A stretch of 40,490 bases of DNA, taken from positions 9,120,192-9,160,681 of the forward strand of contig OZ199840.1 of NCBI GenBank assembly GCA_964304625.1, given 5' to 3'. The notes under the pieces are model-generated. The model had not been told where the DNA came from, ran no database searches, and saw nothing but the letters and a program-made list of their open reading frames with translations. Shown piece by piece: positions 12,596 through 40,282 of the stretch. The position numbers and the translations under genes are program-made. The DNA is from Kudoa neothunni (taxonomy: Eukaryota; Animalia; Cnidaria). Each line of letters begins with the position of its first letter. Position 1 is the stretch's first letter.

Positions 12596-13318
12596 TTATA
12601 TAAACGTTGGATTTAATTGGGGATGAGATGTTTTTTTGAGAATTCCCTCACAAAATTCAATTGTTCTACTCCCAAATTTATTTGGGGGCGGGAACTTTTG
12701 ATCAAACTAATGGTTTCCTCTACACTCATTCCATGTTTCTATTTATTCAATCAGATTCGACAAACCACATCAAATCAACATACTCTAATTAAATAGCACA
12801 TCACCATCAATACACTCCTTCCTTTACCAGCTTTGCAGTGGACGTAAATTTCATTGTTGGAATCTCTCCCCAGAACGCCATCCATAAAATCCAGCCCCCT
12901 TAACACATCGTCTTCCAATGGTAACATATCAAAATCATAGCATGGAACCACACATTGTTCAATCTCATATTTTTTCCATTTCTATCCACCAAAGAGATTA
13001 TTTTTGTTTCAGTTTCAAATGAATAAACCTCCTCGGATGGAGTAAATAGTAGTTCATGAGGCGACAGTATTGAGACTACACCTCGTAATCGGTCATTTTT
13101 CACCAACTTATAAATCAAAAATTCAATTTTTCTCCTCCACCAATAACACAAATAACCTTTTTATATACACTATTCGTTGGATAACCTCCAAGGATTATGT
13201 TTGGTGTGATTTGATTATACCATGTGAGTCCATTTCGGTTCTGAACGCTTAAATTCCAGAACAATGTAATAGGGAAAGCTACAATAGAGCCTAATCTAGT
13301 TTGAAGTATCCATTGCAT
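12596..13318 (-). CDS. PTPMT1: Mitochondrial phosphatidylglycerophosphatase / dual-specificity phosphatase PTPMT1 (4 exons)
   Basis: Spliced: MQWILQTRLGSIVAFPITLFWN...WYNQITPNIILGGYP...RGVVSILSPHEL...KWKKYEIEQCVVPCYDFDMLP...IYVHCKAGKGRSVLMVMCYLIRKHGMSVEETISLIKSSRPQINLG. FPxTL, WYxxI and the CX5R P-loop are typical of PTPMT1. An alternative upstream ATG lies at 13372. Confidence 0.88.
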
Positions 13319-13639
13319 TGAACGCGCATGTGCACCTACCAATAAATTATGATACGCACAGTTAAGACTCATTTTTCGAAATTCCCTCGAGAAAGACAAA
13401 AAAAAATTTTAAAACTACCTGATTGGGTTAAAATTTCAAAAATTATAGTCGTGTTAAATGCTCATTGGATTTACACGATTAATAGCAGTTTTCTCTCTTG
13501 TTGACCCCTTCGAATTATCTAAATTTCCTAAAACTGAGTATATTCGTATACAGTTTCTTATACTGTATGCCTGTCAAATAAGTTTGAAATATCGTTAATG
13601 AATGAAAAATAAAATAAAAATTATACATTTGGTACTTTT

Positions 13640-16761: not shown

Positions 16762-19700
16762 CTATCTACTAGTAATAGATCTGGTGCGTCGTCTATTGGC
16801 ACGATTTCTTCTGAGGTTTCTTGTTTTAACTCCAAAATGTTGACGAGTTATAGGTTTTTGGATGTGTCTAATAGCGTAGGACGATCTATCCGACATCATT
16901 GGGACGTATTTGGTCTTGTCGGAAACAAGTTTAAGAGAGAATCTCTCAAATTTGTTCATTCTCACCATTGGTTTATTCAAAACTAAACCAATCGAAATTT
17001 GCACACACAGAATAAATAAAAAATGTTACGTTGTGTTAGAGCAGCTTGAATTCTTATGAGACAATTTTGAATTATTGATTCCGAGCAACCAAATGCTAAC
17101 TCGTCCGACGAAGCCATATTTGATAGTTCCAATTGGTTGAAATTATGACCAATACCAACCGTCACAATGGTAACTCCAAAGTTTTTGATGAGGTTGCTGT
17201 AGTAGGTGGGATTTGTGGTGGATGGTCTGCTGCTGAGTACAAACAATAATGTCTGTCTTTTACGAATGTATCGGTTGGTTAGTATTCTTTGGTGGACGTA
17301 GCGAAGAAGATTACGGAGGTTTGGTTGAGGGGAGTATCTTTTGGTGTACACGTAACGCCTGTTGTAACGCGCGATGGCTAGAATTCCTCTTGGCAGTTTT
17401 TTGTACGTGTATTGACGATAAATATTTCGATGGAACGAAACAAGTGTTACACGTACTCTGGAAGTGTGGAACATTGCGATTATTTCGGAGGCTGTCTGTC
17501 TAACCACATGGAAGTTCGTTTTTTGACTTATATCTACTGCCACGATCACATTCAAAAATCCTGTTATAGTTTCATAGGAAATGCTGTTGGTAAGGACATC
17601 GTAACGATTGAGTTGTTGGAGGTTTTGAACATTTGTCATTCCAAAAATGGAGAGGAAAGAATCTAAATAAACAGATGTTGATGTTTTGGTGGTTCAGTGA
17701 AATTACTTGATGGTGTAGGTTCCACATCCGCATATTTCCTAAAGATTGCATCTCCAGTTGATGAGTAATATTTTCTAAATGGTTCAACTGTGTATGTGTA
17801 TTTGTTTTCGTAACCAAAATCTGAGGATAAATCGCTTTGAACTCTGGTGAATCGACGGGAAATTGAATTATATCTTATTTTGTAATATCTCATAGATATT
17901 CTTTTGAATATTCTATCATATCTTCGATTTGCTATGTAATTTTCTAAATAAAATTATCAGCACTACGACAATTAGGAAGTGAGTTGAGTTTACTTGTGTA
18001 TATAAATGTGTATAATTTAATTCCTTGGAATTTCAAATGTCCACTAATACGATCCAATTCCCTTACATTTGAGTTGTAATATCGATGACGGTATCGGTCG
18101 GTGGGATAGCCAGCCAAAATCAAAAATATCACTTTCGGCCAATGTCCCTTTGATCGACTGAAAAAGTTTGATCTCGATTTCAAATAATAGATAATATTTC
18201 TAATTGTTCTCGAACGATAGCGCAACCTTATCACTCGTCTTCTCAGTTTGGGACGAGCTGCCGCTCTGTACTTGTCTTTGTTGACATTCATTTCATTGAC
18301 CAACTTTGCTATCTCCGCCTTAGACGCATCATCCACGTAATTTTTGCCTGGAGATGGGCGCGCCAACTTTTTCCTCCTATAAACAATCTTGCGTGCCCTC
18401 ACTCTGGGTCTTGGTTTTTTCACGATTGGTACAACAACTTTTTCAGATGGTAAATTGTTAATGCCACGTAGATATAAGTCCGGTTTAGGTTTCAATCTTG
18501 CCATTCTATGTGGTCTCAAACCAACTGAAACGTCTTGAAAATTCGCAGGATTTAGTTTGTCGATTCCTAGGTTAGTATTGATTAATATTACCAGGTTTTG
18601 TAAATTCAAACAAAAAACTTTTTTGATGCTTAATTTAATTTTTACATCTTTAAAAATGGTGTAAAATAAAATTTGGATAGTCTAAATTTTAAAAGAAGTA
18701 TAATTAATTTATATTAAACATTTAAAAATTTACTTTAATCCAAAATTGTAATATTTTTATTTATATGAATGAATAACAGGAAAAATTAAAAATAAAGTTA
18801 TTAATTAAATTAGTTTATTAGATTTTTGGTATCTCTTATAGGTTGTGAAAAAACTACTTAAAATTAATTACGCCGTTTTCACGCGATTTTGGAACTGCTT
18901 ATGTAATAACATAGATAATAGTTAATTAATATAATAAAGACTAAAAACTTATTATTTACGTAATCTGAACAAATTTTAAAAGAAATTCAAATATATCTTT
19001 CTCCAAGTACTCTAGCAGGACTGTTACATCATATTTGTGAATATTGATAAATCTTTTTAATTCTATTAAATATAATAAGTTGCAATAACAACACCGCCAA
19101 ATATTCGGAAAATTTAGATTTCTTTTTTTAAAAGTCATCAGGGTGAATATGAAGGTTATATTAAGTGTCCCACAGTAGAAGATTCATCCCTGTTTAAAGT
19201 GGATTATCGCAACATTGATTAAGTTAAATGTAATTAATCCTCCAACTATCTTTGGGTTAAAAATAACTCCCGTTTTTTCTACTCACACTGTTTAAAAAAT
19301 TAATTCAAAATGAATCTAAAAGTAAAAATAAATTCCATGGCTGAATTTTATAGAAAAATGGTAATTTTTACAATAACAAATCTTCAATAATCCGACTCGC
19401 TTAACTCGGCTTTTATTCGTAAAGTGTCGTTAAAAAATAACCGCTGTAAACGTAGTTTTTCACCTTTTAAACCCCGATTACCGATTAACGATATTTAATA
19501 ATATAATATTCGACAAAAATTTTATAATTATTGCATTGTTATCTACTAGCTCATTGACAATGACTTCAATTTTAGTACACCACCAAAACCTTTCGAAGTG
19601 TACAATAATCACATCGATTTGGATTAATGGGGTTTAAATGAAGAAAGTGGTTCGGATTTTCTCAAAATTAATGTGATAAAATTTTTAAAATTAGATAAAT

Positions 19701-22700
19701 AATTTTGCTGAAATATTAATTGATAAAAACTGGGATTATTCCCGCCCTATAAACAATGGATAATTCGTTGGAGGGTGATTACTTTCGAATAAAAGAGAGT
19801 TATTTAAGTTTCTCAACAAAATAGCCCAAGAAAAGTGCGAAAAACACGTGACAGTAATTATGAATAATCCTTATCTATTTCCATATATATATATATATAT
19901 AAATCTGATCTAAATTTTTCAATTAATATATTTAGAAAATATTATATATATGATAAATTCAACTATTCAAAGTTTATCTATTTTAATAGTTAAGTTGAAT
20001 TTTTCGCGGATTGTATAAAATGTTTAAAAAAATGAGATTATAATATTCTTATTATTTTCAACACTTAAAATTCAAATATTTTCTATATATGATGAAAATT
20101 TTAATACCATCTGATCGAATAATTTAATGTTAATGTAAATTATCATACTTGGCGTCCTAATTCTAGGCTTTCTTCGTTGTGACAAGCCTACATTGGTGAG
20201 TAATTTTTTAGCGAGTGGAATACTTCTGAATGGATTTAACAATGGAGTTCGTATATTTTTGTTCACGTTTGTTACTCCTCTCGGCCTGTAGTTCGGATAT
20301 CCATATAGAGATCTCTTGAAGTTTTCGGATGAATGTGGGTTAGTGGGCTATATAACCGTTAAAATACTTTACGAATACTTTCATAAATATTTACAGTATC
20401 TCTTATATTTGATGGATTTTCTATCACCTCTTTGCGAGAACGACGTAGCAACTTGAAGGGTCGACGACCTCTTCGTCTATTTCTAGGACGTCTACGCCTT
20501 CTCCTTCTATATATTCTTCGTTTGACACTGTTCGAAATGAGGGACTGGAATGCAAATATTTTGTCGGATTCGCTTCTATAGTAGGTCATTAAACGCAGTA
20601 GACGAGAGAGTTTGCTGGTAAGTCCCAACACATCCAGCGACATTCTGGTGTAAGGGTCAAATAAACGTAGTATATTATGGCCTAATTTGATGTTGTAATC
20701 AGGAGATGCGGTTGTGTCGATTAGAAAAGCTGCTTCGATTGGATTGAAAGAGAAACTCAATTTGTACATATTTTTATTGTTCCATATCCATGTTTTGGCG
20801 ATTTGTCGATCAGACAAAGTTGAAGCAATTGAGTATTTTTTATTGACAACACCACAAACACTTCTCATAATTGCAATAATTCGATTTGCAGATTTGATCA
20901 TATGGTTAGGATTCATTACGAATGATAGGTATTTAGATCCTGACATAAATAACACTTGGTTAGATGGAACTTGGTTGTCCACATTGAAAGCGAAAACTCT
21001 AACCCCACTCTTCAACAACAACAGTGACGGTAATTGGAAGTTATCCAATGATTTCCCCCTCATAAAAACCAATAAAACTTTCGGTAGGCCCGGCATACCA
21101 TATGCAAATTGGTCTTGAGCTGCAAACAAAGCTTCGGCTAAATTTGAACTTTTTCCTGCACCTTTTTCTCTGTATCTCGTGGCACTCATCTTAAAGAAAT
21201 ATACAAGTGCAGATTTTATAAATAAAGTACCATTTGTTCTAAGACATTATTGATGTCTTCATCGCTGTTGAACATTCGGAATCTATTCACTAATTTGATG
21301 TTTTTACCGTACGCCAAGATTGATATATAGTTATCATATTTTGTGAAAGATTTCAAAATTCCATAGAGAGTAGTTTTGATTCTTCTTTTTACTTGTAGGG
21401 GCATATTTCTATCGACTAAAACAACTGTGTTTGCTTTTCCCAATACTAAACATATCTATTAGATGTAAGGATACAATATACAGCTACAATTTTTGTATCC
21501 AAAGTTAAATTTTCTGTACGCAAATCCGACAGACGCCCTTCGTCGTCGTTGTCTACGTTGTCTACGTCTTCGGCGACGATATCTTCTAATTGGTCTCCTT
21601 CTTCTAAGCACTCTTCTAGTTGTTCTCGCCCTTCTCCTTCTTCCTATTGTATGTATTCTTCTGAAAACTCTATTTGATCGGGTTCCAGTTGTTGGACGCC
21701 TAGCAAAAGCTCTTCTGATTTTAGATCCAATGTTCCTCAAACTAAATCTTCTAAGCAGACCTGAAGTACGTAAATGTGATAGCCTATTTCTATTTGTGGG
21801 ACGCACAATATCTTGACGTCTAAATCGTGACCTAATCGAAGCGAATTTATCTCGAACACGCTTAGAAGGCATAATTCTTTTTAATATATTTCGATTCCAT
21901 CGACTTCTTCTTGGGCTGGCCAACCTTGTTTTACGTAAAGGTGACCGTTGTGGACGCCTTAGTATTCGTGATATTTTTGGTACATTTATATTTAGTCGTC
22001 GTGTTGGTCTTCTTCTTCTCCGACGCACCTTTCGTCTTCGTGGTCGACGTAATTTCCTTGGTCTACGTCTTCTCGATAGTCTTCTTACAATCCTTCGTTG
22101 TACAGGGCCTCTGTCAATCGTTAAATGATTGATTCCACGTTGAGCGCCAAACTCTAAAGATGTTTTATTTAACAAAAATTCGAAACCGATAACTAACCTC
22201 GTCTTAGTTGGTAATGTAACCTTCGCATGAGGTTGGGCTCAAAGAAAGAGTTGAAAGATGGTGAAAGGAACAATCTTGAAGGTGGTGCCAATAATCCAAG
22301 TGGAGCAGCTTGTTGTGAAAGGCCTGGCCCCAGAATATAAAGCTAATTATCATTTAATTTAAAAATTGGAATATCTCTATCAATGTTGTTACTTTCATTT
22401 GGGATCCTTTCACTAATTTGGAGAGGTCCCTGTATCCCATAAAATCCAGAACATTGTGGGTGAGTATAAGGAAAACGACAGTTTTTCGATTGAGATGACG
22501 TCTTCTAATTAATATTTTGGCTATTTTGAGAATAGATGGTACGGTGATAACACCTCGGCCGCGATATTGTGGAATTTCGTTTGTAATTTTCTAAACCGTT
22601 ATTTTCAAACAACCAAAAAATAATCATCCACTCACTTCGATGTCTTCCAAAACAGAGAACACCTTATTGTTGATAAATTGTTTTTCTCGGAATTGTGTTA

Positions 22701-25700
22701 ATAGTCGTATTGTTGATTTAGACAAGGATGCCGGGAATAAGGAAATAAGTTGATATATCAGCTTCTGGACCATCAAAAACTCCCCACGGTACAAAGAATC
22801 CACCAAAAATATACTATTTGTGGTTCGAATCGTGTTGTAATTCCACTGTTTCACAATTCTTTGCCAGTGTTGTGTGCTTTTAAATTTATCTGATCATCAA
22901 ATTTAGATCAACTATCACAATAATCCACTCACCATATAAGCTTTTTCGAGACAGCAGGTGACTGGTGACCTCATTCCTCTTATAAATTCGTGGTTCATTT
23001 ATGCCAATCAACTTTAACATATCAATATCATCTGATCGGTCAGCTGCTTTCCGGAGATCGCTTTTCCATGCGGTGATAGTGTTGTCTATCTTTACCAGAT
23101 CACCTTTGATAAATCTTAAATTTTTCGACCCTAAAGTTACAAAATTAATTTATTTACTTAAGTACAAATCAATCACATTCCAGCATAATTCGTTGGATTT
23201 CTTGGAGAAAACCATGTTTCAGATGTATCATTTGGCTCTCATTATTTTCCGATTTCGTCCATCCTCCCAACACTACCTGCTTATAATTGCTCAAAAAGAA
23301 TATGCGTTGAGGGTAAGTGATATTGGTCATGTGGCATAGGTCATAGTTATCTCCAAATTGAATTATATATATCTTTATCAATAAAAAATATTACAGCATA
23401 TATATATATATATATAAAAATTCACAACCAAAATCTATATTATATTCCTATTTTTTTATATTGTTCATTTCAACCTCCAACTTATGATCAGCTTAAAGGC
23501 CTAACTGAAAATTAATTTAATAAATTAATTCAATATTTTTTTTATCTACAAAATTATATTTATATTAGTTTTTTTAAGTTATGCGAACATGAACTTTATC
23601 AATCAATTTTAACTGAGAAAAACCTACTAGTTTTATTTACTTTTATAAAAATACATTAAATAAAGGAATAGATCCAAAAATTTTATCTATACAACAATAA
23701 AATAAATATAAATTATTTATATCTGAAATCTGTGTAGTTTATTTGACGGTAAATTTAATCTTTAATAATGCTTAAAAATGCTTTTACAATTTTTTATCGT
23801 GATAATCCTTAATTAGAGGTTAAAGATCAATTTAATTTTTGTATTTAACTAGAATAAAAACTAAACTGAATGGATTAAATTGGAACAAATAAAAACTTTT
23901 ATTATTTAACATAAATTGTAGTTTTCTGACAAAAATGTTTACCTTCTCCTGTCATACTAAAATAAGATTGTTTAATCTTTTTGTATTAAATTCCACCTCT
24001 TTAATTTTTATTGTTTGAAACGTGTAATTTATCTTTATAAATTTCTGCTAATCAGAAAAATATTTTTGTAAATTCAGCAGTATATTTGACTACTTTTAAG
24101 ATTTTATACATTAAAATAGTGAAGTTGGGCTTAATATCAAAGAAATGAATGAATTAATTAATTAATTACATAACAAAAAAGAAATAAAAAATTAGCCTAT
24201 ATATGAACCAAAATGGAAGCAGTTGTCTTAGCAATTTGTAGAGTAATGATAACTTAAAAATACTGATCTGAGAGATCGCGATGTCCATATAAAATAAAGA
24301 GGTCTAATAACTAAAACTTAATAGTATTTCGTGAGTTATTTGTAGATATTCTCGATGAGAATATTTTTTAATATTTATGCATAATTTAATATATATAATT
24401 TATTAAGTTGCCGTTTTAGATATTATTTAATGATATTTTTATCTCAGTATTAATAAAAGTACAGTTATGAAATAGGATATGTTTAAAATGAGATTATAAT
24501 TTTGTATAAATTATATATCCAGCCTTATTTATTTTTGCGCATGCCTACATATAAAACTTAGCTATTTAATGATTTAATCGCATAAATTGAGTTTAAAAAT
24601 AACTGTGTTTATTTAGAATTTAAGCAAATTTGTTATTATAAATAGAGAAAAATTGTTCAAATCTATTTAAAACAATTAAAGATCTATGGAAAGTAATTAT
24701 TGCATTTTAGAAATATCAATACTTTAGTTCTGTTTTAAGATGCCGTTAACAAAATAAAGATATCAAAAACAGTAATTTCAAATTTTCCCCCTTAACCTAG
24801 AAACAAAACTCATATTTAATTTAAGGTTTTATAGTGGTTTAACTAAGGCAATGGCTATTGAAACGGCAAATTCTAACTCTTTATGAATATACGCATGCGT
24901 TGTGTGAAGTTTTAATCCCATTAATTTTTATTATATTAGATCAATTCTTCATTCCTACAAGTCAGAAATAGCTAAAAATAGACAATACTAATGTTACTTA
25001 AATATTATTTACAATGCAAATAATCACGTTAAATATTATTAATAATATTAGGCCACATCACTAAAAATTAAACGAGGCACCAAAGAAAGAGACTGAGAAT
25101 AATTTTATAGATAGCTATTAAAAACGTATTTCCAACAACATTTGAAGCATTTCTGCCAATTTTTTATTGAGTTTAAAATCGCCCTCATCTAATTTTGATG
25201 TTACTAAGGTCACATCCTGTGATTTAAAATTTCCCCCGGTTGAGAATTTCTGCCCTAGTCCAATGCTGTCGGATCAAAATTTAATCCAAGTAAGGAAGGG
25301 GGTTAGGGATGGAAATGGAAGATAAGCTAATGAGCTTTATAGTACAGATTTGGTGCCTTTCTTAAATAATGTGAAGTTAAATAAATATAAAATAACATAT
25401 TTATCATCTATTATTTATTAGTTTTAATTTTATTGGCCAATAAACTTTATTAATAAATCGCATTGTCACGTGGCTAACATTCAGAGAAAATTTTAATTTC
25501 ATTGGTATGGTTTAAATCTAAATATTTCAAGTAGCATGTTTTTTTAAATAAGTATACATTTATTTTGCACATAAATATTAAAATCACACTAATAAAAAAA
25601 ATAAGACGACTTATTGTATTAAAATATCGTTTTTTTTTAATTCATCATTCTAATAAGTTTTTAAATATGTATATTATATCTCAATGATGAAATGATTTAA

Positions 25701-27461
25701 TTGAACTAATCTAGTATTCATAACAGTCAATATTAGGTATAATTTTTTCGTGTATATTATTAAAAATCACTTCACATTTAAGTAAACATTTATTTCAATT
25801 TTAACGGAGTTTTAGATTATCTTTGTCTAAAACTTACTTTTACGTTGTTTCTTTTTGCGACTTCTCCTATTCTATGAGGATAACTATTGTTTGGTTGTTG
25901 TTTACCATTCACAAGGAGGAATATTATTTTCATGGGAGTTTCGATTCGTTTTGAGTTATCGACGATTTCATTAAGCATAGTTGCCAGGGAAAAGTCAATA
26001 TTTCTATCCTTGGCAACTCCAAGGTCTTGAAAAAAACTTTCCCTAAGGAGATTGTTGAATGCGGCGATAATTTCCTTTTTGGGTCGTGTTAAAAGCTCAT
26101 CAGGGGCTTTTATCTACCAAAATAGGTGAGAGATTATTTTGGGAAATAAACAATTACAATGCCAAGACAACTTCGAAAATGTGCCAACTTGATAAACGAG
26201 TCAGCACTGAATAGATTTGCTAGTTGGTAGGAGAATCGCCTAATGAAAGGTTTATTTTTGAAATGAGAGTCTACAAGTATTCCAACGGATGCTCTACCAG
26301 CTTCTATAAACAGTAGTTAGATAGGATATGTGGGTTGAATCAATATATAAAGTAATGTTTATATTGCAATTAATTTTAAAATAATACTCATATTGATTGG
26401 TGTGCGGAATAGTTTTTTCCAATTCCAACTGTTCGACAGTAATCCCTCTACACCGGATGGATCGTCAATGTAATCACGTTTGGAATTGGGGCTGTTGCAA
26501 TGCATCGAACAATAATCCGACATCAATTTTCTTTCTTCAAAAAACCTTTTCAAATTCTAATTTCTGGTCAGCTCATTATGATACTACCTCTGCTGAAGTG
26601 TTGACTGAAACATTGAGGGAGAACACTTGATGACGTGTATCGCATTCCTTTCTTTCAATGATTGTAAGTAGTCGATATGCTGGTTGATTTCCTGCTGTTT
26701 TTTATCGGTACAAAATTCACATTCATCGCCTTCATGGTTGCTGTTTATTGAACTTTGGTTGTAGACCTTATTCTCGAGTAACATATGAGCCTCGTCGTCT
26801 TGAAAATAATTTTATATTGGAAAAATTAAAATTTAAAAGTATGGCCATTGCCGCCAACGTGTCAATCAAAACAATACCATTAATATATTTTAGAATGCGG
26901 TATTTTTTGAATAAAGCATATTCATCAATGAAGCAGGATTGGGATGGAATATTTTTTGGGAACTCATATAAATTTGGTGAAGTGCCAAAATGAGTCTGAG
27001 ACTTTTTAAAATTGGTCTGGCCTGATGAGTAAAGTTCATTTTGAGCATTAAACAAACCTCCTTCTTGTTTGTTGATATCTGAAGATTACCGCTTTTTAGA
27101 AAGTACGTATACAATTAACTATGTATTACTTTTATCTACACCTTGGGAATCGGTGATATAGTTTGCTTGTTGGATGCTAGGTGTAGGAGCATAGATTTTA
27201 AAATTTGCAGTGGAATATGGAAGTGATCTTTGGGAATTAAAAATTTCGTTATCTGAGGCCTGAAACAGCTAAAATTAAATATGAATTTTTAAAATAACAA
27301 GCAAACCGATACATGCTGATCATTTGGTGTACATTCGTCTATATTTTTACGTTTTATTTTTTTACATTTTAACATGACTTCAAAATACTTTGTTCAAGTT
27401 GTAGAATCCATAAAATGTAAAAACAATTTAGGATGCCTAAAGTTGTACATTTTCTTCTCAT
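16762..27461 (-). CDS. Giant secreted protein, ~1,900 aa, ~21 exons: putative signal peptide, Cys-containing N-terminal region, five degenerate VWA domains and very Arg-rich segments
   Basis: All exons join in frame via GT-AG introns from MRRKCTTLGILNCFYILWILQL (27461) to RRTRSITSR* (16762). Two long introns: 23373-25837 (splits KIIFLLVNG...AKRNNVK|IYIIQFGDNYD) and 18567-20148. VWA-pattern strands: VGILVDS, SIFLVDS, TVVLVDR, AAFLIDT, VIVAVDIS; PKVLLVFMRGKS...KSGVRVFAF; KNFGVTIVTVGIGHNFNQLELSNMASS. Confidence 0.82.
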
Positions 27462-36446: not shown

Positions 36447-37949
36447 ATGTATACGAAGGGGGGATTTGACTTGGACAGATTGAAGAGGAAGTTTGTACTG
36501 AAAAAGGAGGAAGGGAATTTTGGATTTTCATTGGTGTGCAACTCGAAACGCTTGGGAAATTACATTAAAGATGTTGTACCAGGGTCAGTGGCAGAAAAGG
36601 CTGGAATCAAAGTGATTAACGACTTTGATTAGCAGTTTGACACATACATGAATAAATTAAAACTCTCTATTGGTTTAGTAATGATCATAATTATTGAAAT
36701 TATTAATTTAGCCTGGCGACCGAGTGATACAAATAGGCGATACAAATATAATTGGATTCCAACCGATTGAAATAGTAAAGCTGCTGTCCAACTGTGAGAA
36801 TCTACTGGAGTTGTACGCGGTGGAGGAGAAATTTTATAAGGTCTATCTAAAGCAGAGCGAATATCCGCAAATATCATCTCCAACGTTTGACGAGAAGAAT
36901 ATCGATGGTTCCGTGTTTGTTAGGTCATCGGACGAGCAGTTATCTACCACATCGACAGCAGTGGCAGCAGCGGCTGCGATAAACCAAGCTAAAATGTACG
37001 ATTTTGAGGCTGCGGCTATTGATGCGGCTGCTTCCACAGTCACTACTCCCAATCATGAAACCTATCGTACGTTACATGTAATTATTTTTGTCGGATGGGT
37101 TATTTTGCATTAAGAACTGAATAATAATCTTTTTAAATGTAGGCAGCATCCGAAAAATCACCCTATCAAAAAAAGGATATTCTTTTCAGTGCCTGGAATC
37201 ATATTAAGAGTTGTTTCAAGGGCAACAAAAAGAGCTCCCGCTTCGGTTATTCTCACAGCGAAACCTATAACAGGAATGATGCCACTAGAACAATCAATTT
37301 TCCTACTCCAAAAGATGAAGCGGTCATGACAAACACTAAAGTTTCTGTGTCCTCCACTTTGTCAAATGAGTACGGCATATCCAACGTGAGAACAAAGAGT
37401 AACACAGCAGCCACTAAATCCTCTAAGAATTTCAACGCTACCAAATCCTCTAAAGCAAATAACAGCAAAATAAACTCTGCTCTACCCACCCAAACTAGCA
37501 CCTCAACAGAAGATATGACTGATCACAACAAACATCTGGCAGAAAAGTCGTTGGGGTACACACGACAACAAAACCAAAAACAAGGTGGTTTACCCCCCGG
37601 CATAAAAAAATCTCCACCTAATCAGAGTTGTATGTTTTTTTATAATTATAATTGCACTAAAATTATTTAAATGTATATATTAATATTTATTACATTTTTA
37701 ATATGTGCTAGTGATGGTTTTGTTAAATGATGATTGTTTAGACAGCGTATCAAAATCCAACACCACTAAAAGTCATCCCTTAGTAAGAGATTATTGTGGA
37801 GGAATGGGTTAATCGCGGCGGTAACTGTTTAGCATGATACCAACACCAAACGAAATGAAGTTGTAATTCAATTTGAACATCCCAAAATAATCGTCCTCAA
37901 TTCAACCGAAAGTAAGTTCCCACTCTGTTTAATCTTAATAGACCATTAA
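36447..37949 (+). CDS. NHERF/PDZK1-like single PDZ domain protein with low-complexity Ala/Ser/Thr/Asn tail
   Basis: LKKEEGNFGFSL...GNYIKDVVPGSVAEKAGIK|PGDRVIQIGDTNI...EIVKLL...LELYAVEE is a full PDZ domain across the intron ~36612-36711. Later exons join in frame. The stop is 37949 if two last small introns are used, otherwise 37812. Confidence 0.8.
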
Positions 37950-38213
37950 TTCACATCGATTTCACTTAGGAGACATTGAAGTTTGACATACGCCGCCACA
38001 ATCTATTGGAACTATTTATTTTTCAATATTGGACAATAGTTGGAGCATATTATAATAATTGCTGCTGTTTCAATTAGATTTGTAGCATGCATATCAACCT
38101 GAGTAAAATCACAGTAAAAAATACATTAATAATAAATTATGGAATAAAATAAAAAATATATACTGATCATAAATTAAGGGAATAAAGTCAAGTTAAATTG
38201 AAAAAATAAAAAA

Positions 38214-40282
<2,069 letters not shown>

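What the first reader, a model, noticed from the sequence alone, without database searches (positions are those of the whole stretch)
16762..27461. Giant secreted polycationic multi-VWA protein: candidate new extracellular structural/adhesive system
Seen: about 13 separate ORF-track fragments splice into one ~1,900-aa reading frame. It has a hydrophobic N-terminus, five VWA-like domains, no collagen, EGF or TM segment that I can see, and several extremely Arg-rich stretches. Known: tandem VWA proteins (matrilin, collagen VI, invertebrate glue, shell and cnidocyst proteins) are extracellular assembly modules. I know no family that combines them with protamine-like blocks. Inference: it could be a matrix, spore-wall or capsule protein that condenses with a polyanion (sulfated glycans; poly-gamma-glutamate or chondroitin if the organism is a cnidarian/myxozoan), or an adhesive for anionic host surfaces.
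Basis: partly seen in the sequence, partly recalled or inferred. Interest (0 to 1): 0.85.

Follow-up and report, generated by a model that had tools for sequence, protein, structure and literature searches.

The report
Positively charged polar-capsule VWA protein
This gene of a microscopic fish parasite (a myxozoan, related to jellyfish) encodes a very large, strongly positively charged secreted protein whose counterparts are among the most abundant proteins in the parasite's harpoon-like attachment capsule, so it is a concrete candidate for the glue that holds the fired thread to the host.

Summary
Window 27461-16762 (minus strand; genome matches Kudoa neothunni) is one 21-exon, all-GT-AG gene of about 1,918 aa. 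It has a signal peptide, five VWA domains without the MIDAS motif, two polybasic inserts (one splitting VWA4) and a basic tail; net charge is about +250. Two other myxozoans have the same architecture. One has ten exons of identical length and 35- and 34-nt introns where the window has 2,465 and 1,582 nt. The inserts keep charge and position, not sequence: Arg here, Lys or Arg/Ser elsewhere. Orthologs occur, labelled 'collagen alpha-3(VI)-like', in two published polar-capsule proteomes: Ceratonova shasta (1,899 aa; highest spectral count in the five of eight table parts read) and Myxobolus honghuensis (pI 11.8, iBAQ about 1.5%). A Hydra protein has five collinear VWA domains without inserts. 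It is not collagen VI, matrilin or protamine. Best reading: a major polar-capsule protein (about 85%) whose polycation blocks bind polyanions and act as the tubule's electrostatic glue (about 50%, untested). No RNA reads covered this gene. The scan had not noted it on other DNA.

The parts
16762..27461 (-). Whole gene: 21 exons, about 1,918 aa, net charge about +251, Arg 12.7%, Lys 7.0%
   Evidence: single copy in the genome for the three exons tested
27389..27461 (-). Exon 1: start codon and signal-peptide-like segment (24 aa), phase-1 donor
   Evidence: equivalent 22-aa exon with the same phase in L007; Phobius signal peptide in the C. shasta ortholog
27313..27338 (-). Exon 2: 26-nt micro-exon with a conserved Cys
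   Evidence: 26-nt exon with Cys at the same place in L007
26388..27259 (-). Exons 3-6 (27259-27130, 27078-26878, 26798-26588, 26545-26388): poorly conserved, near-neutral N-terminal region with a few Cys, ending in a W-x-W linker
   Evidence: the exon 3 donor could lie 12 nt earlier
23177..26303 (-). VWA1, exons 7-9 (26303-26158, 26113-25838, 23372-23177); no DxSxS
   Evidence: 42-54% identity to L007; one uninterrupted ORF in L011; weak family-profile hit; collinear by eye with the C. shasta cDNA
23373..25837 (-). Intron 8, 2,465 nt, holding a dispersed repeat at about 24770-25260
   Evidence: 35-nt intron at the same site in L007; no intron there in L011; 40 loci scored at 72-81% identity
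22933..23130 (-). Exon 10: linker between VWA1 and VWA2 (longer and Lys-rich in L007)
22198..22889 (-). VWA2, exons 11-13 (22889-22636, 22590-22393, 22342-22198); no DxSxS
   Evidence: best match is Hydra domain 2
21482..22153 (-). Exon 14: polybasic insert A between VWA2 and VWA3, 223 aa, 36.8% Arg, net +89
   Evidence: counterparts: 207 aa, net +73, Lys-rich in L007; 245 aa, net +50, Arg/Ser-rich in L011
20836..21445 (-). VWA3, exon 15 (21445-21231) and first part of exon 16; no DxSxS
   Evidence: Pfam VWA in orthologs; hhalign 90.6% and 98.2%
20524..20802 (-). W-x-W linker and first half of VWA4 (in exon 16, 21189-20395)
   Evidence: groups with Hydra domain 4 at 98/94
18220..20523 (-). Polybasic insert B inside VWA4: tail of exon 16 (44% Arg), exon 17 (20347-20149), head of exon 18 (from 18566); about 225 aa, net about +56
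   Evidence: a basic insert lies at the same place in L007 and L011; the halves of VWA4 match profile positions 3-91 and 83-137
18567..20148 (-). Intron 17, 1,582 nt, with old repeat fragments at about 19230-19990
   Evidence: 34-nt phase-1 intron at the same site in L007; 11 other genomic matches
17707..18219 (-). Second half of VWA4: end of exon 18 (to 17994) and exon 19 (17943-17707)
   Evidence: Pfam VWA E 0.016; 36-39% identity to L007
17030..17662 (-). Exon 20: VWA5, intact in one exon; no DxSxS
   Evidence: Pfam E 3.6e-9; AlphaFold2 and Foldseek; 51% identity to L007
16762..16982 (-). Exon 21: basic C-terminal tail (net +18) and stop codon
   Evidence: 41% identity to L007 over 53 aa

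Best explanation
A major structural protein of the myxozoan polar capsule (nematocyst), acting as an electrostatic glue or cohesive on the polar tubule. Shown: one secreted-type gene with five MIDAS-less VWA domains and large polycationic inserts, conserved in position and charge in three myxozoan loci; orthologs are abundant in purified capsules of two species. Inferred: the protein enters the capsule through the secretory path. The VWA domains dock, without metal, on the tubule or wall scaffold or on each other. The probably disordered basic blocks are held complexed with capsule polyanions (poly-gamma-glutamate or glycosaminoglycan) in storage. On firing they are exposed on the everted tubule, or expelled with the content, and bind anionic host mucus and glycocalyx, anchoring the spore. 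Capsule location about 85%; this adhesive mechanism about 50%.
For: C. shasta capsule proteome: 1,899-aa ortholog with signal peptide, 717/563/728 spectra, the highest in the five of eight table parts read; next is a second VWA protein at 407/419/346, and nematogalectins have 0-29. M. honghuensis capsule proteome: entry 25635, pI 11.8, 24-25 peptides, iBAQ 1.37-1.61%, against 0.60-0.67% for the nematogalectin group. Its printed start matches fetched protein P0044 from residue 348 on, basic insert included. Charge is kept while sequence is not. The nearest free-living relative found, Hydra LOC100200905, has no basic inserts (net +32). C. shasta capsules stain with cationic dye, have closed tubules and serve for anchoring. 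Precedents: Mlig-ap1 cohesion depends on Lys/Arg blocks and is blocked by heparin; the top Foldseek hits are mussel byssus PTMP1 and VWF A1. That VWF A1 lacks a functional MIDAS and binds anionic ligands is my own knowledge.
Against: No localisation, binding or adhesion data exist for any member in what I read. No RNA or peptide evidence for the Kudoa gene itself. Capsule preparations allowed up to 10% valves. Only the first 400 residues of the C. shasta ortholog are printed, so its basic inserts are not verified. Tryptic proteomics cannot show that the basic blocks survive in the mature protein, and capsules hold PC3-like convertases. A polycation beside poly-gamma-glutamate could as well serve internal packing. 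The Foldseek ranking among VWA structures carries no functional weight at 17-22% identity.
Confidence: 0.5

Rival explanations
1. Internal capsule material only. The polycation complexes poly-gamma-glutamate or chondroitin to pack and stabilise the coiled tubule, tune osmotic pressure, or give the elastic recoil seen in myxozoan tubules. It never touches the host.
For: Same proteomic evidence. Capsules hold an anionic matrix and transglutaminases. Tubule contraction is reported in myxozoans and not in free-living cnidarians (PMC5064783), as the basic inserts are absent from the Hydra relative.
Against: No elastomeric repeat was seen and Cys is 0.8%, so it is unlikely to join the disulfide-linked wall. 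Free-living capsules store poly-gamma-glutamate while the Hydra relative lacks the inserts.
Confidence: 0.3
2. A polyprotein. Convertases cut it in the basic regions into separate VWA modules and free cationic peptides that act on host mucus, membranes or microbes.
For: PC3-like proteases are in the capsule proteomes. There are 15 and 6 R-x-[KR]-R sites in exons 14 and 16, and KR sites flank an acidic spacer inside insert A of L011. In M. honghuensis the acidic N-terminal entry 25636 has 12-35 times lower iBAQ than the C-terminal entry.
Against: The Lys-rich ortholog L007 has only three such sites, none in insert A. Insert B interrupts a folded domain. The iBAQ gap may come from shared-peptide assignment, and the N-terminus of 25636 differs from L011. 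No homologous toxins were found in C. shasta capsules.
Confidence: 0.12
3. A spore-valve or other extracellular matrix protein that co-purified with capsules.
For: Valves made up as much as 10% of particles in the C. shasta preparations. Tandem VWA proteins are typical matrix modules.
Against: Found by two unrelated purification methods (dielectrophoresis after SDS and protease; sonication with Percoll) in two distant species, at or above nematogalectin level. The Hydra relative exists in an animal without valves.
Confidence: 0.07
4. Two or three separate genes, split at the long introns, possibly with a nested protamine-like gene.
For: No transcript for this locus. In-frame stops follow exons 9 and 17 if they are read unspliced.
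Against: The same junctions are 35-, 30- and 34-nt introns in L007. VWA1, VWA2, insert A and VWA3 lie in one 1,011-codon ORF in L011. The C. shasta cDNA is 1,899 aa and reads across the intron-8 site.
Confidence: 0.02

Closest known systems
[quoted passage not shown]
   Same: 1,899 aa against 1,918; signal peptide; several VWA; by eye 19/47 identities over exon 7 and an ungapped 92-residue match (19 identities) over exon 8, continuing into exon 9. Top spectral count among the rows read.
   Different: Its N-terminal region is strongly acidic, while Kudoa's is near neutral. The rest of the sequence is not printed. In the text I read, the paper says only that vWA proteins were found.
Myxobolus honghuensis 25635_MH_MC and 25636_MH_MC (PMC8773148, Dataset S1) = locus L011 / P0044; top BLAST description T. 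kitauei RF11_07124
   Same: Five VWA domains in the same order, basic inserts at the same two places, no DxSxS; detected in purified nematocysts.
   Different: Inserts are Arg/Ser-rich with an acidic spacer; 20-45% identity; far fewer introns. The paper's main text does not mention VWA.
Hydra vulgaris LOC100200905 (XP_065674605.1, P0015)
   Same: Five VWA domains without DxSxS at the MIDAS position, each preceded by a W-x-W linker; domains 2-5 mostly match one to one; all 20 domains fall on one side of a 98/100 branch against canonical VWA.
   Different: No polybasic inserts (net +32); a Ser/Gln/Asn/Gly repeat interrupts domain 1 instead. Its function and expression site were not found in the papers searched.
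Collagen VI N-terminal VWA arrays and matrilins
   Same: Tandem VWA domains in a secreted protein; source of the database label; weak similarity over 40-90-residue stretches.
   Different: No Gly-X-Y, EGF or Kunitz domain found, no MIDAS, and about 450 residues of polycationic insert.
Macrostomum lignano Mlig-ap1 (PMC6410801)
   Same: Giant secreted protein with Lys/Arg-rich blocks around folded extracellular domains; charge-based cohesion. Functional analogue.
   Different: Its domains are C-type lectin, VWD, C8, TIL and EGF, with high Cys; not homologous by architecture.
Mussel PTMP1 and VWF A1 domain
   Same: VWA fold (top Foldseek hits for VWA5, E about 3e-9).
   Different: 17-18% identity; PTMP1 has an intact MIDAS; neither has polybasic inserts.
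Montipora capricornis XP_068757174.1 (P0010)
   Same: Cnidarian tandem-VWA protein that is strongly basic (Arg 16.9%, net +147).
   Different: Intact DxSxS, Arg spread over the domains, no W-x-W linker; groups with canonical VWA in the tree.

Membership tests
VWA superfamily | VWA profile match or fold, domains 3 and 5 | tested here: met
VWA superfamily | VWA profile match, domains 2 and 4 | tested here: met
   Not by Pfam at cut-off; by a profile built from Pfam-positive family domains, 43 and 17 bits against a shuffled maximum of 5.8, and by match to Pfam-positive Hydra domains 2 and 4
VWA superfamily | VWA profile match, domain 1 | tested here: inconclusive
   No Pfam hit; 12.7 bits over profile positions 23-174; Atlas neighbours mostly VWA at 0.93 but with few shared features
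MIDAS-type VWA (collagen VI, matrilin, integrin I domain) | DxSxS metal site after strand 1 | tested here: not met
   Absent in all 15 myxozoan and 5 Hydra domains
Collagen VI | Gly-X-Y triple helix between VWA arrays | tested here: not met
   No collagen Pfam hit in the stretches scanned; none visible in the exon translations; Gly under 4%
Matrilin | EGF repeats and Cys-flanked VWA domains | tested here: not met
   No EGF hit; Cys 0.8%
Matrilin | C-terminal coiled-coil oligomerisation domain | not tested
   No coiled-coil prediction was run; the tail is a 72-aa basic stretch
Minicollagen / NOWA-type capsule wall proteins | Cys-rich domains with six Cys; poly-Pro and collagen segment | tested here: not met
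   At most 3 Cys in any exon
Protamine / sperm nuclear basic protein | Small stand-alone nuclear protein with conserved Arg clusters | tested here: not met
   The block is an internal exon of a signal-peptide protein, in frame with VWA domains in L011 and Lys-rich in L007
Mlig-ap1-type cohesive glue protein | Long Lys/Arg-rich regions in a secreted protein | tested here: met
Mlig-ap1-type cohesive glue protein | VWD, C8, TIL, C-type lectin and EGF core, high Cys | tested here: not met
Mlig-ap1-type cohesive glue protein | Adhesion lost on knock-down or polyanion competition | not testable with these tools
   needs bench work
Myxozoan polar-capsule proteins | Detected in purified capsules | tested here: met
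   For orthologs in C. shasta and M. honghuensis; no data for this species
Myxozoan polar-capsule proteins | Localised to capsule wall, matrix or tubule | not testable with these tools
   No localisation study found
Hydra LOC100200905-like penta-VWA group | Five collinear MIDAS-less VWA domains with W-x-W linkers | tested here: met
   (linker clear before domains 1 and 4, modified before 2, not seen before 3 and 5 in Kudoa)
Hydra LOC100200905-like penta-VWA group | One-to-one orthology by tree | tested here: inconclusive
   Shared branch 98/100 and a domain-4 clade 98/94, but Hydra domains 1, 2, 3 and 5 do not pair with their counterparts; short alignment, long branches, outgroup chosen by an intact MIDAS

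The most novel reading that the evidence does not exclude
Myxozoans turned an older cnidarian five-VWA protein into the main adhesive of the polar tubule by inserting polycationic blocks, one of them into a VWA domain. The blocks are stored neutralised by the capsule's polyanion, perhaps paired with the second, more acidic multi-VWA capsule protein, and switch to binding host mucus on firing. This would be a first molecular account of how these parasites' spores stick to hosts, and a charge-triggered underwater glue.
Probability: 0.35. Interest if true: 0.85.

Novelty: new variant of a known kind. Interest (0 to 1): 0.62.

Why it matters
Polar-tubule anchoring is the first step of myxozoan infection, and I found no paper naming the molecule that does it. 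This locus gives a single-copy gene, conserved across marine (Kudoa, Ceratonova) and freshwater (Myxobolus) lineages, whose orthologs rank at or near the top of capsule proteomes yet carry a misleading collagen VI label. Its architecture makes a direct prediction: attachment should be blocked by polyanions or antibodies. That is testable, and relevant to protecting farmed fish and to wet-adhesive design. VWA proteins in cnidocysts and Lys/Arg-rich glue proteins are each known, which keeps this below categorically new.

Tried and rejected
RNA support: no RNA run holds the stretch. Three metatranscriptomes laid on 17401-23400 gave no reads, and the DNA run gave only short spurious pieces; this is no test. 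Word-index homolog searches were insensitive: exon 20 found nothing, not even its 51%-identical ortholog, and the two Hydra-based searches found only Hydra and collagen VI among capped candidates. They say nothing about the family's range. AlphaFold2 on exon 16 with two sequences failed (pLDDT 40.9). A 24-row alignment of exon pieces was unusable. hhalign of short pieces of V1, V2b, V2c and V4 against canonical VWA gave low probabilities. My first exon 13-14 boundaries were wrong and were corrected from the ortholog. The Hydra nematocyst proteome paper is not held and no paper names LOC100200905, so the Hydra protein's location is unknown. No paralog was found in the genome for exons 14, 16 and 20. 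Rejected readings: collagen VI, matrilin, protamine, split genes. The sequences printed in the two supplements have no reference, so they were compared by eye and by short anchors only.
Full report
Organism. The genome has 40.26 Mb in four contigs (17.15, 12.04 and 11.05 Mb and a small one). The window is mostly 22-38% GC, and an SSU rRNA fragment looks Kudoa-like from memory. The published Kudoa neothunni assembly is 40.2 Mb with N50 12.0 Mb, three chromosomes, GC 30.4% and median intron 49 nt (PMC12239612). I therefore take this to be K. neothunni, a myxozoan fish parasite. It is not human DNA.

Gene model. Stop-free frames on the minus strand fit 21 exons from 27461 to 16762, all introns GT-AG, with no internal stop, 1,918 codons, Arg 12.7%, Lys 7.0% and net charge about +251. 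A phmmer search with exon 16 found P0001 (44% identity), encoded on contig L007 of another AT-rich myxozoan, with shared upstream neighbours. L007 gives a 24-exon, 2,040-codon model with introns of 30-42 nt. Ten exons are identical in length to the window's, including a 26-nt micro-exon, and all 16 paired exon-end phases agree. The window's 2,465- and 1,582-nt introns are 35 and 34 nt there; in the window they contain dispersed repeats. A third, more distant locus, L011, holds VWA1, VWA2, insert A and VWA3 in one 1,011-codon ORF, followed by VWA4 and VWA5 behind tiny introns. One gene is thus well supported by comparison, although no RNA read covers the Kudoa locus.

Anatomy. The order is: signal peptide; about 240 poorly conserved residues; VWA1; linker; VWA2; insert A; VWA3; first half of VWA4; insert B; second half of VWA4; VWA5; basic tail. 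VWA5 and VWA3 are firm. VWA2 and VWA4 score on a profile built from Pfam-positive family domains, and VWA1 is weak. None of the 15 myxozoan domains has DxSxS. Insert A is 223 aa, 36.8% Arg, net +89 here; 207 aa, 26% Lys, net +73 in L007; 245 aa, 25% Arg and 19% Ser, net +50 in L011. Insert B splits VWA4 near profile position 90 in all three. Position and charge are kept while sequence is not, which I read as selection for a polycation rather than for a protamine-like sequence. The Lys bias of L007 goes with its 20.7% GC.

What it is. [quoted passage not shown] Its printed first 400 residues match exons 6-9 by eye: the W-x-W linker, 19 of 47 identities over exon 7, an ungapped 92-residue match over exon 8, and read-through at the intron-8 site. 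It has the highest count in the five of eight table parts I read; per residue it is comparable to nb012a. The M. honghuensis nematocyst proteome (PMC8773148, Dataset S1) lists 25635_MH_MC under the same label, pI 11.8, 24-25 peptides (none unique to that entry), iBAQ 1.37-1.61%. Its printed start follows P0044 from residue 348 through insert A, apart from a stretch read in other frames. So L011 is M. honghuensis or nearly identical to it. Entry 25636 covers VWA1 and is described as T. kitauei RF11_07124. In the passages I read, neither paper describes the architecture, and further searches found no study of it.

Relatives outside Myxozoa. Hydra LOC100200905 has five VWA domains without DxSxS at the MIDAS position and with W-x-W linkers; domains 2-5 mostly match their myxozoan counterparts in order. 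In a domain tree, Hydra and myxozoan domains fall together against canonical VWA (98/100) and domain 4 forms a clade (98/94); the other pairings are unresolved and branches are long. Hydra lacks the basic inserts. If it is the ortholog, the inserts were gained in myxozoans or lost in Hydra; one outgroup cannot decide. Other hits are collagen VI-like arrays with short weak matches. Cnidocyte-specific vWFA proteins are known in Nematostella (PMC12549020).

How it most likely works. Shown: gene, architecture, charge conservation, and capsule proteomics of orthologs. Inferred: secretion into the capsule, metal-independent docking through VWA domains, storage of the basic blocks against the anionic matrix that C. 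shasta capsules appear to contain, and exposure on firing to bind anionic host surfaces. C. shasta tubules are closed and serve for anchoring; Myxobolus tubules anchor, contract and in some species release content (PMC5064783). The functional precedent is flatworm Mlig-ap1, whose Lys/Arg blocks give cohesion that heparin blocks. I put capsule location at about 85% and the glue mechanism at about 50%. Rivals: internal packing or elasticity 30%, processing into cationic peptides 12%, valve or matrix contaminant 7%, split genes 2%.

Verdict. The feature is real and correctly described. It works like a polycationic glue or matrix protein but is not a member of collagen VI, matrilin, minicollagen, protamine or the Mlig-ap1 family. 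It is a new variant of a known kind: a cnidocyst VWA protein, already detected but mislabelled, with a polycation-insert design I did not find described. Interest 0.62; 0.85 if it proves to be the tubule adhesive. The scan's earlier notes on this genome concern Cys-rich capsule candidates and did not affect this reading.

Noticed in passing
L003 and L004 (G000 C1, about 2.637-2.642 Mb): A second multi-VWA gene. By eye it resembles M. honghuensis 15837 (pI 5.97) in the orthogroup shared by all four myxozoan capsule proteomes, which probably includes C. shasta DN21450, the second most abundant row read. A possible acidic partner of the protein studied here.
   Followed up: partly
L002 1429-2213 (G000 C1, about 5.432 Mb): A further VWA-domain gene, split by introns.
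   Followed up: no
window about 37850-40250 (-) and 36450-37400 (+): A PTEN-like gene (PF10409, E 4e-5) and a neighbouring gene, both syntenic with L007 1.8-5.0 kb.
   Followed up: partly
window about 24770-25260 and 19230-19990: Old dispersed repeats inside the two long introns; the first has at least 40 scored copies at 72-81% identity.
   Followed up: partly
L005 1350-1970 (G000 C2, about 5.426 Mb): Only the 3' third of an SSU rRNA gene, abutting AT-rich DNA; no full-length SSU was returned, but the search was a floor. Possibly an rDNA fragment.
   Followed up: no
P0015 residues about 360-425: Hydra domain 1 is interrupted by a Ser/Gln/Asn/Gly repeat at about the same profile position where insert B splits myxozoan VWA4: a loop that tolerates insertions.
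   Followed up: partly
P0010 (Montipora capricornis XP_068757174.1): Coral tandem-VWA protein with 16.9% Arg, net +147 and intact MIDAS: a separate route to a polycationic VWA protein in cnidarians.
   Followed up: partly
L011 60-540 against published entry 25636_MH_MC: The published entry has a long acidic N-terminus with KR sites that differs from L011 upstream of the shared part, and 12-35 times lower iBAQ than entry 25635: propeptide removal, a paralog, or an assembly artefact.
   Followed up: no
window 12900-13399 (-): Two ORF pieces that look by eye like a dual-specificity (PTPMT1-type) phosphatase; no Pfam hit at E 0.05.
   Followed up: partly
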